A stretch of 64,000 nucleotides of DNA, taken from positions 370,510 to 434,509 of the IMG/VR virus record IMGVR_UViG_3300032236_001850; one strand, written 5' to 3'. A model generated the notes under the pieces. It was given only the letters and a program-made list of their open reading frames with translations, was not told the DNA's origin and did no database searches. This document shows, piece after piece, positions 6,323 to 49,404 of the stretch (position 1 is its first letter; every line of letters begins with the position of its first letter). The position numbers and the translations under genes are program-made.

Positions 6323-6823
6323 ATGTTTTACCCAACAGGAAATAGTACAAATGGAAGAAAATTAGTTTGTATCGATGACGAAAGAAAAAATTTAGATGAA
6401 TGTCTAGATGAATGCAACTGTAACGAGTCTTGTGATTGTGACGATTGCAACTGTAACGAATCTTGCAATTGTGTCGAGAATTGGCTTGGTGAGAATAATT
6501 ACTGTGTTGAAAAATGGCAACTAAAAAAGTATCTTAATGATAGAGGACTAAAAATGCAAAAACTCGATGAGGACATGGACGGAGGAGCAGCTCCAGCAGC
6601 TGGACTTGCAACACTGGGTAATGTGGGCGGAATGGGAAATCCAGCACCCCCTACTAATGGTGGTACAAACGCAGGTTTCTATGACGGTTCAAAAAATGGA
6701 AGCGGAGATAGGTTTGGCACGTTAACTGTTGGTACAGGCGCAGCTAATAAGAAAGGTAAAAGAAAAAAGAAAATGATTTCCTACAAAGAATTTGTTGATA
6801 AAAATAGAAAGAAAAAGAAATAA
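6323..6823 (+). CDS. Cys-rich/Gly-rich protein with C-terminal CTS-like motif
   Basis: CNCNESCxC duplicated; ends KKMISYKEFVDKNRKKKK. Confidence 0.55.
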   Translation: MFYPTGNSTNGRKLVCIDDERKNLDECLDECNCNESCDCDDCNCNESCNCVENWLGENNYCVEKWQLKKYLNDRGLKMQKLDEDMDGGAAPAAGLATLGNVGGMGNPAPPTNGGTNAGFYDGSKNGSGDRFGTLTVGTGAANKKGKRKKKMISYKEFVDKNRKKKK

Positions 6824-43900: not shown

Positions 43901-44568
43901 ATCTATGAAAATATCAAAACAAGACAAACTATTACCTCATTTAGGTTTATTAAACTTTGAGGGTGATGCTGTAAGAGCATACAAAAAACCAGACGGTGAT
44001 CGCTACATCATAGTGGACGAAAGACTTGAAATTATAGCAGAGTGGGATTCTCTTGAGATCTTTGAGTTTATAAGAGGTGATTTTGCAGTAACTACTAGTT
44101 ACGGTAAGGATTACAGATACACAGACTGGAACGACGATTGCAAGCCAAGGAAAGAAGTATTGGATCTTTTCATTGGTATAGTTGATTTACCTGAAGTGGT
44201 TAAGAGATTATCAGCCCTTGCTTCTGGTTTAAGCGAGGAAGATCTTGGTAGACATTCAATAGAAAGCATACAACTAATATCGGAAAAAACCATGCCACCC
44301 GTTCTTTGTGTTAAGTATAAGGACGAGGTAATTGAAAGTTTCAAGGATATTAGTGAGATGGTTAGATTCATGGAGGCTTTGAAAAATGGTTAATGAGAAT
44401 GTAAGAGTTGGATTTAGATCAGATGATCCCAACTTTGATTGGCAATCTGTTATCGGGAAACAACCCGGATATGAGTTTGTAAGATCAAGAACCATAGAAA
44501 ACAACGAGAATCCAAACTGGCCAAAATGGACAATTATTATTGATTATAAAAGAAATAAAATTAAATAA
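40943..44568 (+). CDS. Run of small hypothetical (probably early) genes, several membrane-associated
   Basis: Packed ORFs 40943, 41137, 41892, 42341, 42789, 43244, 43675, 43905, 44386; no recognised motifs. Confidence 0.5.
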
Positions 44569-44569
44569 A

Positions 44570-45001
44570 ATGAGTAAAGTAAAAATTTCAACAGACAAAG
44601 GTGATATGGTTGCAGAACTATATGACAACGAAACACCAATCACAGCAGGCAATTTTTTAAAATTAGCTAATGATGGATTCTATAACGGACTAAATTTCCA
44701 TAGAGTTATCCCTAATTTTGTTATCCAAGGTGGATGTCCAACAGGTACTGGTCAAGGTGGACCTGGTTATAATATCCCTTGTGAGGTAACTGCACCAAAT
44801 CAATTCCACGACAGAGGAGTTCTTTCTATGGCACATGCCGGAAGAAACACAGGAGGATCCCAGTTCTTTATTTGTCACAGCAGACAAAACACAGCTCACT
44901 TGGACGGTAACCACACATGCTTTGGTAAGGTAACTGAGGGTCTAGATGTTATCGACCAGATCCAGCAAGGTGACAAGATAATATCAATTTCTGAAATATA
45001 A
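44570..45001 (+). CDS. Cyclophilin-type peptidyl-prolyl isomerase
   Basis: [29 protein letters not shown]; start ATG 44570. Confidence 0.95.
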
Positions 45002-45767: not shown

Positions 45768-46013
45768 ATGAATAATTCTGATAACAAAATACCAGAACTT
45801 AATCTAAAGATGGAAACTAGGACTATGGAAGCAAAGACTAGAGTACTACGTACTCCTTATGTTTTAGTAACAACTCCTTATATGATACTTTCTGATAAAG
45901 ATGGAACTAGAAGAGTGTGGACAAGAAACAAAAGAAGCATAATTCTGTATTATCTTTATAAAATAACAAGGATTGAATGGTTTATAAAAAAATATAATGA
46001 ACAGGCTAGATAA
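45768..46013 (+). CDS. Small protein carrying a gp23 major-capsid-like segment
   Basis: IPELNLKMETRTMEAKTRVLRTPY resembles the gp23 ExxFxIxKxxxEAKSRxLKAxY segment. Confidence 0.5.
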   Translation: MNNSDNKIPELNLKMETRTMEAKTRVLRTPYVLVTTPYMILSDKDGTRRVWTRNKRSIILYYLYKITRIEWFIKKYNEQAR

Positions 46014-47247
46014 ACAATACACAGATCTACTTGCAACCATATTGGAGCATGGGGTAGATAAAAAAGATAGAACAGGAACCGGCACAAGGTCAATATTTGG
46101 TTATACCATCCGACATAATATGAAAGATGGGTTTCCACTTCTTACAACCAAGAAAATGTCATTCAAAACAATCGTAACAGAACTTATCTGGTTCTTACGA
46201 GGTGATACAAACATTAAGTTTTTGGTTGATAATAATTGTCATATTTGGGATGGTGATGCTTATAAAGCGTTTGGAAAATGGAAACAAGAAACAGACGCTA
46301 AAATAAGAAAAGAAAACCCAACAATAGATTTTCAGCCTTTGGAATATGAATCACAAGAAGAATTTATCAACAAAATAAAAACAGATGATGAGTTTGCTAA
46401 GAAGTGGGGTGAGTTAGGTCCAATTTATGGAGCTCAATGGAGAAGTTGGGGAGAACATTTACCTCAGGATCCTCAATATAAATTAGCAGCTAGAACATAT
46501 ATCGATCAGATCCATAACTCTATAGATTTGCTTATAATTGACCCTGACTCAAGAAGAAACAGAGTTTCAGCATGGAATGTTGGTGAACTGAACATGATGG
46601 TTCTTCCGCCATGTCATACTGATTTTCAATTTTATTCCGTTGAGATGACAAACGAAGAAAGGTGTCAATATTTTGCAAGTAGTCTGAATAAGAATATTTC
46701 ATTTACAAAAAATCTTACCAATAAAAAACTTGATGAACTTGGTTGTCCCTCACGTAGATTGTCACTAATGTGGAATCAGCGTTCGGTAGATACTTTCTTG
46801 GGTTTACCCTTTAATATTGCTTCCTATGGATTATTATTAGAAATAATTGGGAGATGTGTTAATATGATTCCTGACCAGTTGATTGGTAATTTGGGTGATG
46901 TTCATTTGTATTCAAATCACATTCAGCAAGCTAAAGAACAGATTGGAAGAAAATATACACACGAGGAAAGAACCTCCATGTTGATCTCCGCTATGGGTGA
47001 AGAAAAATATAATAAAGCACTTGGTGAACTGATGCCATTTGGTGGAGGTATGAGTGAATATTATGACTCTTATAACATACCTCACAGAACTAGAGAACCC
47101 TTTGATTTACCTAAATTGATTCTAAATCCAATATTTTTAGCGGATCTGGAACATAAAGGATTTGATGCAGCTATAAATGGCGAGATTAATTTCAAAATTG
47201 AAAATTATCAAGCTCATCCACATATACCAGCACCTCTAAGCAACTAA
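45997..47247 (+). CDS. thyA: Thymidylate synthase with insertions
   Basis: DRTGTGT, LPPCH, QRSVD..GLPFN, DVHLYSNH. Confidence 0.95.
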   Translation: MNRLDKQYTDLLATILEHGVDKKDRTGTGTRSIFGYTIRHNMKDGFPLLTTKKMSFKTIVTELIWFLRGDTNIKFLVDNNCHIWDGDAYKAFGKWKQETDAKIRKENPTIDFQPLEYESQEEFINKIKTDDEFAKKWGELGPIYGAQWRSWGEHLPQDPQYKLAARTYIDQIHNSIDLLIIDPDSRRNRVSAWNVGELNMMVLPPCHTDFQFYSVEMTNEERCQYFASSLNKNISFTKNLTNKKLDELGCPSRRLSLMWNQRSVDTFLGLPFNIASYGLLLEIIGRCVNMIPDQLIGNLGDVHLYSNHIQQAKEQIGRKYTHEERTSMLISAMGEEKYNKALGELMPFGGGMSEYYDSYNIPHRTREPFDLPKLILNPIFLADLEHKGFDAAINGEINFKIENYQAHPHIPAPLSN

Positions 47248-47426: not shown

Positions 47427-47810
47427 ATGAAAGCAATAATAGCAGTAAATGAGCTAGGATACATAGGTCTAAATGATTCACTTCCTTGGAGATGCTCCGA
47501 GGATCTTAAGCACTTCAAGAAAATGACGGATGGTTGCACACTGTTGGTGGGTCATAACACCTCCCAGAAAATGCCACCACTTCCAGGTAGAACAGTAATT
47601 AACGACGAAAGAGGTGTTATCATATCTGAGGGTATAGATTGGTGCATAGGTGGTAAAAAGACCTATGAGAAATACTGTCATCTATTCACTGAGCTTCACA
47701 TCTCAAGAATAGAAAACAAATCTGAAGGTGATACAGTTTATCCGGATCTGTCCTCATTGAATCCAGAATGCCAAATTTTTGAATATAATTTCAAAGAAAA
47801 TCAGAAATAA
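47427..47810 (+). CDS. folA: Dihydrofolate reductase
   Basis: IG..LPW..EDLKHFK, LPGR, IGG, GDT. Confidence 0.9.
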   Translation: MKAIIAVNELGYIGLNDSLPWRCSEDLKHFKKMTDGCTLLVGHNTSQKMPPLPGRTVINDERGVIISEGIDWCIGGKKTYEKYCHLFTELHISRIENKSEGDTVYPDLSSLNPECQIFEYNFKENQK

Positions 47811-48674: not shown

Positions 48675-49088
48675 ATGGAACTAATATCATCACACCCAAT
48701 AAAGAAATCAGATTTAGGATTTCATGGTAATCTATTCGGAGGAAAATTAATGGCCTGGATGGATGCAGGAGCTGCTGTTTATGCAATGGAAGCTTGTGAT
48801 TCACCAAGAATGGTAACTATACTCATAGATAAATGTGTTTTCAAGAAACCTGCCAAGGAAGGACAGATCATTAAGATCTATGGTGAGGTACTAAGTATTG
48901 GTAACACATCAATCACTCTTTATATGGAAGCTAGATCGCATAATGTTTATTCAGGAACACAATCTGTGATTCTGTCAACAAATATGAAATTCGTACGAAT
49001 TGACGAGAATGGTGATCCTATTCCTATCTCCGATAAAGTGAAGGAGAAATACAAGGACAATGGGGAAAAGGAAAAAGAATCCAGATAG
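48675..49088 (+). CDS. Acyl-CoA thioesterase (hotdog fold, YciA-like)
   Basis: HGNLFGGKLMAWMD, FKKP, GNTSI, FVRID. Confidence 0.85.
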   Translation: MELISSHPIKKSDLGFHGNLFGGKLMAWMDAGAAVYAMEACDSPRMVTILIDKCVFKKPAKEGQIIKIYGEVLSIGNTSITLYMEARSHNVYSGTQSVILSTNMKFVRIDENGDPIPISDKVKEKYKDNGEKEKESR

Positions 49089-49404
49089 GGATCTGGATAG
49101 AAAAAAATGGGCTGATGATCTTATGGGTCGCTACGGTCAATTACAGGAAATAATGGACAATACACCAATTTCTGAAATTGAATGGAAACCTGATAATACT
49201 GACATTTTCCTACCAATACAAAGAGTTTTTGCAAAAACTGTTGGTCTAGATCTGGTCGAGGTTGCACCAATGTCTGCACCGACTGGGATGTTATTCTACA
49301 TGGATCCAGCTACAATTCTTACCGACGAGGAACAAATTGAGAGAGATGCAGCCAAATGGATGAGAGAAAATATTGAATGGGTAAAAATAAAATTAGATAA
49401 ATGA
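49060..49404 (+). CDS. Small protein carrying a gp23 Gol-region-like segment
   Basis: LPIQRVFAKTVGLDLVEVAPMSAPTGMLFYMD. Confidence 0.65.
   Translation: MGKRKKNPDRDLDRKKWADDLMGRYGQLQEIMDNTPISEIEWKPDNTDIFLPIQRVFAKTVGLDLVEVAPMSAPTGMLFYMDPATILTDEEQIERDAAKWMRENIEWVKIKLDK

What the first reader, a model, noticed from the sequence alone, without database searches (positions are those of the whole stretch)
45768..46013. Second mini-gene with a different gp23 segment
Seen: IPELNLKMETRTMEAKTRVLRTPY resembles gp23 EMGFRIDKQVIEAKSRQLKAAY (recalled), another highly conserved capsid segment. Two separate conserved MCP pieces grafted into small ORFs 3 kb apart suggest a repertoire of capsid mimics rather than chance (inference).
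Basis: partly seen in the sequence, partly recalled or inferred. Interest (0 to 1): 0.65.

Follow-up and report, generated by a model that had tools for sequence, protein, structure and literature searches.

The report
Small phage gene, weak capsid-like stretch
This is a real, conserved 81-residue gene just upstream of thymidylate synthase in a 434-kb phage; its first 30 residues weakly resemble one strand of the T4-type capsid protein, but they were not grafted in and the likeness may well be coincidence, whereas two other small genes in the window do carry clear capsid-protein pieces.

Summary
The ORF (45768-46013, +) exists as described, and the recalled T4 gp23 segment is correct: gp23 242-270, the return strand of the E-loop before the spine helix.

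The ORF is a genuine gene. It has at least 33 homologue clusters, dN/dS of 0.1-0.36, and start/stop overlaps with its neighbours and with td.

The likeness to gp23 is weak but beats controls.
- PHROG 138 gives a genome-wide E of 0.005, and 5e-4 for the orthologue in a 430-kb relative.
- My own T4-type capsid profile gives 9.0 bits against noise of 2.8 bits or less. One of 47,750 shuffled ORFs reaches that score.

The likeness is also fragile.
- Pfam Gp23 gives no hit.
- There is no match to the phage's own capsid protein.
- Only one subclade of the gene family shows it. The rest of the family scores 0.3% in hhalign.
- The N-terminus is collinear with that of the short-form relatives, which argues against a graft.
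- The key arginine varies between near-identical strains.
- A relative has an unrelated gene in this slot.

The wider idea is partly right. ORF114 (49060-49404) and ORF166 (6323-6823) carry clear capsid-protein pieces, and only the capsid protein has such fragments in this genome.

Verdict: about 50% coincidence, about 30% true capsid-strand mimic, about 12% non-functional relic.

The parts
45768..46013 (+). ORF81: an 81-aa, basic (pI 10.1) small protein and a member of a conserved uncharacterised phage family.
   Evidence: The ORF is listed. There are 33 homologue clusters at 43-100% identity and 31 representatives in the exhaustive search. dN/dS is 0.10-0.36.
45774..45866 (+). Residues 3-33: the stretch that resembles the E-loop return strand of T4-type capsid proteins (T4 gp23 242-270; MCP2 32-57).
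   Evidence: AlphaFold gives pLDDT below 50 for residues 1-38.
45873..45920 (+). Residues 36-51: the most conserved core of the family, with a predicted beta-hairpin at 39-42/48-51. It looks superficially like a single WD40 blade.
   Evidence: Invariant and nearly invariant columns are listed. The WD40-type matches are and 36/37.
45930..46004 (+). Residues 55-79: two basic, aromatic-rich amphipathic helices. This is the second conserved module of the family and is kept even in members that lack the N-terminal stretch.
45768..45775 (+). Start of ORF81 overlapping the stop of the upstream 66-aa ORF (ATGAATAA), as in translational coupling.
   Evidence: Read directly from the sequence.
45997..46013 (+). 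17-nt overlap between the end of ORF81 and the start of thymidylate synthase (td, 45997-47247).
   Evidence: The same arrangement is seen in relatives.
49207..49305 (+). Context: residues 50-82 of ORF114 (49060-49404), a robust copy of MCP 98-131. I place this in the Gol region of T4 gp23 from memory.
6593..6724 (+). Context: residues 91-134 of ORF166 (6323-6823), a robust copy of MCP 44-98, the mature N-terminus or N-arm.
   Evidence: The orthologue in a 219-kb phage keeps the motif.
44259..44339 (+). Context: residues 119-145 of ORF162 (43905-44393), a marginal likeness to MCP 527-553.
   Evidence: See (E 0.1; 1 of 2000 shuffles; 8.7 bits against noise of 3.9). By BLAST it lies inside the noise continuum.

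Best explanation
ORF81 is an ordinary but genuine small accessory gene of an uncharacterised phage family.

Shown:
- It is under purifying selection.
- It sits in a chain of overlapping small ORFs and ends 17 nt inside td.
- In most loci that hold the family it lies just upstream of thymidylate synthase.
- The conserved core is a beta-hairpin (residues 36-51) plus two basic amphipathic helices (55-79).
- The N-terminal 30 residues are the variable, dispensable part of the family.

Inferred:
- The gp23-like look of that N-terminal tail arose inside one subclade through a 2-residue indel and a few substitutions in an amphipathic K/E/T-rich strand.
- It is most likely a coincidental or convergent likeness. 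It is neither a grafted capsid piece nor a maintained capsid mimic.
- The protein is probably made by translational coupling with td. It probably acts through its conserved core as a small binding partner of a protein or nucleic acid in the nucleotide-precursor module. I put about 0.3 on that specific role.
For: A real gene and a real family:
- Homologues and family alignment.
- Purifying selection.
- Position upstream of td.

Not a graft:
- The long-form N-terminus aligns residue by residue with the short-form relatives.

The likeness is subclade-only:
- T4-type profile scores are 5.5-14.3 bits in six close relatives, and 5.0 bits or less (mostly at or below zero) in the other members scored.
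- hhalign of the subclade against T4-type MCPs gives Prob 74%. The rest of the family gives 0.3%.
- The best capsid match of the rest-of-family N-terminus lies in a different capsid region, which shows how readily such short strands match.

No support from family-level searches:
- The family profile against 1.84 billion proteins, against the PDB and against the own genome finds no capsid protein.
- The family against the MCP2 family gives Prob 0.6%.

Not like the phage's own capsid protein:
-.

The motif is not constrained:
- The arginine is glycine in P0002 and P0004, and the motif is altered in L006.
- The R25G allele is the one found in pond and viral metagenomes of three studies.

Other points:
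- A 139-kb relative keeps ORF162-like, td, DHFR and ORF114-like genes but has an unrelated 117-aa ORF upstream of td.
- Family members exist that lack the N-terminal stretch or carry another domain in its place.
Against: The likeness beats every control I could build:
- PHROG 138 gives a genome-wide E of 0.0054, and 5.3e-4 for the orthologue. It finds nothing in 14 control genomes, in T4 beyond gp23/gp24, or in a Flavobacterium phage beyond its MCP.
- The T4-type profile gives 9.0 bits against real-ORF noise of 2.8 bits or less. One of 47,750 shuffles reaches it.

The context raises the prior:
- The same genome has two robust MCP-segment ORFs, and only the MCP has such fragments.
- ORF81 lies 3.3 kb from ORF114.
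- The matched strand is the hairpin partner of the strand that ORF114 carries, in the E-loop that holds the I domain.

Some divergent family members also carry K-S/T-R-x-L/V-K-like motifs (P0083, P0076, P0058).
Confidence: 0.5

Rival explanations
1. ORF81 is a true capsid-strand mimic and the weakest member of a set that also includes ORF114, ORF166 and perhaps ORF162.

Its disordered N-terminal tail would present an E-loop return strand of T4 type. It would dock by beta-strand addition onto whatever normally holds that strand. Candidates are E-loop strand 1, the edge of the P-domain sheet, the acidic helix of a neighbouring P domain, or a host factor or sensor that reads conserved capsid segments. 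The conserved core would supply a second function.
For: - The statistics are above both shuffled and real-sequence nulls, and hhalign of the subclade gives Prob 74%, P 2.8e-5.
- Fragment sharing in this genome is specific to the MCP.
- Three candidates lie within 5.5 kb. Only 19 of 392 small genes lie that close to ORF114.
- The matched segment maps onto the hairpin loop and return strand of the MCP2 model (E37-49 and E51-60, ahead of the spine helix). In T4 it maps onto the I-domain linker, which corresponds to the E-loop.
- The tail is predicted to be unstructured when alone.
Against: - The likeness is to T4-type MCPs, not to the phage's own MCP, whereas ORF114, ORF166 and ORF162 match the own clade.
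- The motif drifts within the subclade and between strains.
- Most of the family lacks it.
- ORF81 and ORF114 are distributed independently.
- Pfam sees nothing.
Confidence: 0.3
2. The N-terminus is an ancient relic of a capsid-protein fragment that was captured when the family arose. Its origin would be homologous but it would have no present mimic function. It survives recognisably in a few lineages and has eroded in the rest.
For: - Long or KSR-type forms occur in at least four places on the family tree. They include the very divergent P0083, P0076 and P0058.
- The first half of the motif (hydrophobic-P-E-hydrophobic, then L-K-x-E-T-K-x-V) is family-wide and lines up with the capsid consensus.
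Against: - The tree is poorly resolved, and the gp23-like subclade nests beside short forms.
- The rest-of-family profile gives no signal at the homologous capsid position.
- The candidate pieces lie in reverse order along the + strand, so this is not a decayed capsid gene.
Confidence: 0.12
3. The ORF is not a gene. It would be a chance open frame, or a conserved td leader or regulatory RNA read as protein.
For: It overlaps the td start. A 6-bp palindrome lies at 45841-45855.
Against: - dN/dS is 0.1-0.36 with many synonymous changes in both halves.
- The family keeps its C-terminus even where td does not follow.
- The palindrome is not conserved.
Confidence: 0.03

Closest known systems
T4 gp23 major capsid protein, residues 242-270 (Pfam PF07068 Gp23; PHROG 138): the linker and strand that returns from the I domain into the P domain
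   Same: About 30 residues of ORF81 align with this region: 9/29 identities to T4 gp23 and 10/26 to the best T4-type capsid protein (L035). The shared pattern is x-P-E-h-x-h-x-h-E-x-x-T-h-x-A-K-S/T-R-x-L-K/R-x-x-Y.
   Different: ORF81 is 81 aa and has no A or P domain and no spine helix. It is below every curated threshold. Most of its own family lacks the motif, and the phage's own MCP reads differently at this place.
ORF114 and ORF166 of the same phage: small proteins with clear MCP pieces. ORF114's piece is the Gol region of T4 gp23, which binds EF-Tu and triggers the Lit protease (PMC3014915).
   Same: They are small ORFs in the same non-structural region and carry a short capsid-like stretch. 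ORF81's stretch would be the hairpin partner of the strand that ORF114 carries.
   Different: In ORF114 and ORF166 the match is to the phage's own MCP at 51-56% identity (E about 1e-6 to 1e-7). In ORF114 it is the most conserved part of the family. ORF81 meets neither condition.
Short-segment mimicry of capsid-assembly proteins by satellites, such as SaPI1 CpmB copying the C-terminal capsid-binding helix of the helper's scaffolding protein (from memory, not checked here)
   Same: A small protein would borrow a short interaction segment of an assembly protein to engage its partner. ORF81 would work like this if the mimic reading is right.
   Different: There is no evidence of binding here. ORF81 is encoded by the phage itself, and the segment is a beta-strand of the capsid protein, not a scaffold helix.
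Uncharacterised small ORFs of the plastic, early-gene regions of T4-like phages
   Same: It is small and tightly packed, has overlapping starts and stops, is replaceable between relatives, and has no Pfam, PHROG or NCBIfam family. It has no homologue in 50,697 GenBank phages.
   Different: It is unusually widespread in metagenomes and is usually tied to td.

Membership tests
T4-type major capsid protein (Pfam PF07068 Gp23 / PHROG 138) | Score above the curated Pfam cut-off (24.4 bits). | tested here: not met
   Pfam gives no hit at E<=1 or E<=10. The genome-wide PF07068 search returns MCP, MCP2 and ORF114 only.
T4-type major capsid protein (Pfam PF07068 Gp23 / PHROG 138) | HK97 fold with A and P domains and a spine helix. 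| tested here: not met
   The protein is 81 aa. The AlphaFold model has one hairpin and two short helices at pLDDT 49. MCP2, by contrast, folds as HK97 and matches T4 gp23 at E 1e-13.
T4-type major capsid protein (Pfam PF07068 Gp23 / PHROG 138) | Local likeness to the E-loop return strand that exceeds the controls. | tested here: met
   PHROG 138 gives E 0.0054 genome-wide. The T4-type profile gives 9.0 bits against noise of 2.8 bits or less, and 1 of 47,750 shuffles reaches it. The signal is weak and depends on the profile used.
MCP-segment small proteins of this phage (ORF114/ORF166 type) | Significant match to the phage's own or own-clade MCP. | tested here: not met
   BLASTP gives no alignment at E<=100. 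The own-clade profile gives -3.3 bits, rank 554.
MCP-segment small proteins of this phage (ORF114/ORF166 type) | The capsid-like stretch is the conserved heart of the gene family. | tested here: not met
   The conserved core of ORF81 is residues 36-79. The N-terminal stretch varies, is missing or is replaced in some members. Compare ORF114.
MCP-segment small proteins of this phage (ORF114/ORF166 type) | Physical association with capsid protein, procapsid or virion. | not testable with these tools
   This needs pull-down experiments or virion proteomics.
ORF81 small-protein family (alignment A1; unnamed) | Full-length similarity, with the T-P-Y ... G-T-R-x-x-W hairpin and the basic aromatic C-terminal helices. 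| tested here: met
   
ORF81 small-protein family (alignment A1; unnamed) | Position just upstream of thymidylate synthase. | tested here: met
   True for the window and for most of the nine viral loci: directly, or with a homing-endonuclease ORF or a few small ORFs between. No td is seen within the held flank in L008 and L009.
WD40 repeat | Several tandem blades that form a propeller. | tested here: not met
   Only one blade-like hairpin (residues 33-53) matches coatomer and NACHT-WD40 proteins, at E 0.04-5e-5. It is a resemblance of a single unit.

The most novel reading that the evidence does not exclude
This 434-kb phage encodes a set of small, non-structural-region proteins. Each would display one interaction element of its capsid protein:
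- N-fist/N-arm in ORF166.
- Gol region and E-loop strand 1 in ORF114.
- E-loop return strand in ORF81.
- A C-terminal P-domain strand in ORF162.

ORF162, ORF81 and ORF114 lie within 5.5 kb. Together they would act as capsid-segment mimics. They could be regulators or poisons of capsid assembly. ORF81's strand is of T4 type rather than own type, so it could be aimed at competing phages. Alternatively they could be decoys for host factors or immune sensors that read conserved capsid segments, such as EF-Tu/Lit-like systems.
Probability: 0.15. Interest if true: 0.8.

Novelty: new member of a known kind. Interest (0 to 1): 0.42.

Why it matters
If ORF81 is only a small accessory gene with a chance likeness, the result shows how easily short amphipathic strands imitate conserved capsid motifs. 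It also shows which controls separate the cases: profiles of the phage's own clade, family-level profiles, and variation between strains.

If the mimic reading is right, ORF81 would belong with ORF114 and ORF166 to an undescribed class of phage proteins that borrow single interaction elements of the major capsid protein. That bears on capsid assembly control, on competition between phages, and on how hosts sense capsid proteins.

The robust cases, ORF114 and ORF166, deserve experiments whatever the fate of ORF81.

Tried and rejected
- Complex prediction of ORF114 with ORF81 gave no verdict (score 0.00; controls not run). It counts neither for nor against binding.
- AlphaFold on the family alignment gave pLDDT 49. 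That is too poor for a fold search, so ORF81 could not be mapped on the HK97 fold directly. MCP2 was folded instead.
- The ESM Atlas gave no usable hit.
- tblastn against 50,697 GenBank phages gave no match.
- NCBIfam gave nothing.
- The family profile against the PDB gave only WD40-blade look-alikes.
- The family profile against 1.84 billion proteins gave only short relatives, a junk repeat protein and a WD40 protein.
- A decayed capsid paralogue was rejected. The candidate pieces lie in reverse order on the + strand, and each sits in a family under selection.
- General segmental duplication was rejected. No other large gene has small-ORF fragments at E<=1e-3.
- The hairpin at 45841-45855 as a functional or mutational source of the motif was rejected, because it is not conserved in relatives.
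- Sigma-70-type promoter sites are no more frequent than in shuffles.
- No RNA run holds the region, so expression is untested.
- Two literature searches found no description of capsid-fragment small ORFs. A third search failed on a format slip.

Full report
**Setting.** The window is the last 64 kb (370,510-434,509) of a 434,509-bp virus record with direct terminal repeats and 35% G+C. The genome has a T4-like major capsid protein, here called MCP: 574 aa, genome 298,781-300,505, 139.5 bits to Pfam Gp23. It also has a second capsid-like protein, here called MCP2: 297 aa, genome 87,289-88,182. The nearest cultured relatives by DNA are Flavobacterium phages, and they match only over td and a thioesterase. 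The same DNA occurs in pond, lake and viral metagenomes of five studies.

**The observation.** The ORF at 45768-46013 (+) encodes 81 residues, and the quoted peptide is residues 8-31. The recalled T4 segment is correct. The T4 gp23 sequences returned by the PDB search and translated from the T4 genome record NC_000866 read as quoted at residues 249-270.
- ORF81 3-31 aligns with gp23 242-270 at 9/29 identities. One of 2000 shuffles scores as high.
- ORF81 4-29 aligns with the homologous part of MCP2 (32-57) at 9/26 identities. The pairwise E is 4e-4 and 8 of 2000 shuffles score as high.
- There is no alignment at all with the phage's own MCP.

[quoted passage not shown] The gp23 stretch in question follows the I domain and runs into the spine helix.
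- MCP2 folds confidently (pLDDT 81.6) with a long hairpin, E17-31 and E37-49/E51-60, followed by helices 61-69 and 74-101.
- Its best structural matches are T4 gp23 and gp24 (Foldseek E 1e-13).
- So the ORF81 look-alike covers the hairpin turn and the return strand of the E-loop.

**ORF81 is a real gene.**
- The word search finds 33 clusters of 74-142 aa at 43-100% identity.
- The exhaustive profile search finds 31 representatives.
- Nine viral contigs carry it.
- dN/dS is 0.10-0.36 in both halves, with plentiful synonymous change.
- Its ATG overlaps the stop of the upstream 66-aa ORF, and its last 17 nt overlap the td start.
- In most loci it lies just upstream of td. Sometimes a homing-endonuclease ORF or a few small ORFs lie between.
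- The conserved core is residues 36-51, a predicted hairpin, plus residues 55-79, two basic aromatic-rich helices.
- The N-terminal stretch is the variable part. Some members lack it, and one has another domain in its place.
- No Pfam, NCBIfam or PHROG family other than the weak head-protein hit covers it. There is no homologue in 50,697 GenBank phages.

**Is the likeness more than chance?** Evidence in favour:
- PHROG 138 (major head protein), searched against all six frames of the genome, returns only MCP, MCP2, ORF81 (E 0.0054, profile 172-205) and ORF114 (E 0.013). It returns nothing in 14 control bacterial genomes.
- In the 430-kb relative the ORF81 orthologue scores E 5.3e-4. T4 and a Flavobacterium phage give only their capsid genes.
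- I built a profile from 30 T4-type capsid proteins (T4 gp23 plus IMG/VR loci), leaving this genome out. It ranks MCP 98.9, ORF114 16.2, MCP2 13.7 and ORF81 9.0 bits (E 0.086), then noise at 2.8 bits or less.
- One of 47,750 shuffled small ORFs reaches 9.0 bits. That is about 2e-5 per ORF, or about 0.04 per genome set. Reversed real ORFs reach at most 5.0 bits.
- hhalign of the six long-form relatives against the T4-type alignment gives Prob 74% and P 2.8e-5 over 32 columns.

Evidence against:
- Pfam Gp23 sees nothing.
- A profile of the phage's own capsid clade gives -3.3 bits. A mixed profile gives E 0.74.
- The raw Smith-Waterman score ranks 8th of 1910 in a smooth continuum.
- The family profile finds no capsid protein in the own genome, the PDB or 1.84 billion proteins.
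- The family against the MCP2 family gives Prob 0.6%.

Several profiles were tried, so the corrected significance is roughly 0.01-0.1 genome-wide. The signal is detectable but not compelling.

**Evolution of the motif.** The gp23-like form is confined to one well-supported subclade (98/87) that sits beside short-form relatives. The rest of the tree is poorly resolved.
- The long and short forms align residue by residue. The long form has two extra residues and a handful of substitutions. Nothing was grafted.
- Scores in the subclade run from 14.3 down to 5.5 bits. The other members score 5.0 bits or less, mostly at or below zero.
- The rest-of-family profile gives 0.3% against T4-type capsid proteins. 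Its best capsid match is a different region, gp23 445-454. This shows how easily such short strands find partners.
- The key arginine is glycine in P0002 and P0004, and the motif is altered in L006.
- The R25G allele is the one assembled from pond and viral metagenomes of three studies.
- The motif is closer to T4-type capsid proteins (best 10/26 identities) than to the own clade, which has lost the basic residues at this place.
- A 139-kb relative keeps ORF162-like, cyclophilin, td, DHFR and ORF114-like genes but has an unrelated 117-aa ORF upstream of td.
- A 219-kb phage has a short-form ORF81 and an ORF166-like gene but no detectable ORF114.
- On the other hand, a few very divergent members (P0083, P0076, P0058) also show K-S/T-R-x-L/V-K-like motifs. 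An old capsid origin therefore cannot be excluded.

**The 'repertoire'.**
- With the MCP as BLAST query against all 2190 ORFs, ORF166 (window 6323-6823) matches MCP 50-98 at 51% identity (E 1.3e-6). ORF114 (49060-49404) matches MCP 98-131 at 56% identity (E 1.7e-6). Their z-scores are 14 and 16 against shuffles.
- The two pieces abut at MCP residue 98.
- In the ORF114 family the capsid-like stretch is the most conserved part, and it shares its invariant residues with the MCP.
- The ORF166 orthologue in the 219-kb phage keeps the motif.
- ORF162 (43905-44393) is marginal: E 0.1 by BLAST, 8.7 bits against noise of 3.9 with the own-clade profile, and inside the BLAST noise continuum.
- In an all-against-all BLAST, the only pairs of a small ORF with a fragment of a large protein at E<=1e-3 are these two, and both involve the MCP.
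- ORF114's stretch corresponds to the Gol region of T4 gp23. The review describes Gol as a 29-residue region, the most conserved part of gp23, that binds EF-Tu and activates Lit (PMC3014915). The residue numbers 93-122 are from my memory.

**Weighing.** The statistics and the context (two robust siblings, fragment sharing specific to the MCP, ORF81 3.3 kb from ORF114, and hairpin-partner geometry) argue that the likeness could be real. The evolutionary evidence argues against a grafted or maintained mimic. That evidence is the collinearity with short forms, the restriction to one subclade, the drift of the key residues even between strains, the likeness to foreign rather than own capsid proteins, and the independent distribution. 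I put about 0.5 on coincidence or convergence in an ordinary small gene, 0.3 on a functional capsid-strand mimic, 0.12 on a non-functional relic and 0.03 on 'not a gene'.

**Likely working.**
- Shown: the gene is translationally linked to td, and it has a conserved hairpin-plus-helices core and a variable N-terminal tail.
- Inferred: the protein is a small basic binding protein (pI 10.1) of the nucleotide-precursor gene cluster that acts through its core. If the mimic reading is right, the tail would dock by strand addition where the E-loop return strand normally lies.

**Limits.**
- There are no expression data, because no RNA run holds the region.
- The complex prediction gave no verdict.
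- The ORF81 model is of low confidence.

Noticed in passing
window 49060-49404 (+), residues 50-82: ORF114 carries a clear copy of MCP 98-131, at 56% identity. From memory this is the Gol region of T4 gp23. It is the most conserved part of a 14-cluster family, and its invariant residues are shared with the MCP. It could bind EF-Tu as Gol does.
   Followed up: partly
window 6323-6823 (+), residues 91-134: ORF166 has a cysteine-rich N-terminal half, then a copy of MCP 44-98 (the mature N-terminus or N-arm, 51% identity), then a lysine-rich tail. Its capsid piece ends at MCP residue 98, where ORF114's begins. An orthologue in a 219-kb phage keeps the GSGDKF-x-SL motif.
   Followed up: partly
window 43905-44393 (+), residues 119-145: ORF162 shows a marginal likeness to MCP 527-553. 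The pattern is kept in four relatives, but by BLAST it lies inside the noise.
   Followed up: partly
genome 87289-88182 = L002:1423-2316: MCP2 is a 297-aa gp23-like protein with no I domain and no N-arm. It is encoded among non-structural genes, 210 kb from the head module. The model has pLDDT 81.6 and its best structural matches are T4 gp23 and gp24. It belongs to a family of about 22 clusters. Its role is open: it could be a vertex protein or something else.
   Followed up: partly
window 45997-47247 (+); variable part 46265-46352: Thymidylate synthase is long (416 aa) and carries insertions. One stretch of about 87 nt is replaced by 95 other letters in related strains. In relatives td is split by a GIY-YIG endonuclease ORF (L006) or is flanked by an I-TevI-like gene (L104) or a 341-aa ORF (L005).
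   Followed up: partly
window 45777-45840: Pond and viral metagenomes of three studies hold an allele of ORF81 with S4E, M20V and R25G. It equals P0002.
   Followed up: yes
window 44540-45001 (+): A cyclophilin-type peptidyl-prolyl isomerase lies between ORF162 and ORF81. It is conserved in relatives (Pfam Pro_isomerase in L104).
   Followed up: no
window 45873-45920 (ORF81 residues 36-51): The family core (T-P-Y-M-I-L-S-D-K-x-G-T-R-x-x-W) looks like a single WD40 blade. It draws coatomer and NACHT-WD40 proteins in profile searches.
   Followed up: partly
window 45841-45855: A perfect 6-bp palindrome with a 3-nt loop encodes the R-V-L-R-T part of the gp23-like motif. It is not conserved in relatives.
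   Followed up: yes
window 48675-49088 and 47427-47810 (+): A hotdog-fold thioesterase-like ORF and dihydrofolate reductase flank the region. The whole stretch from 41 to 50 kb is a run of tightly packed small + strand ORFs, many with overlapping starts and stops.
   Followed up: no
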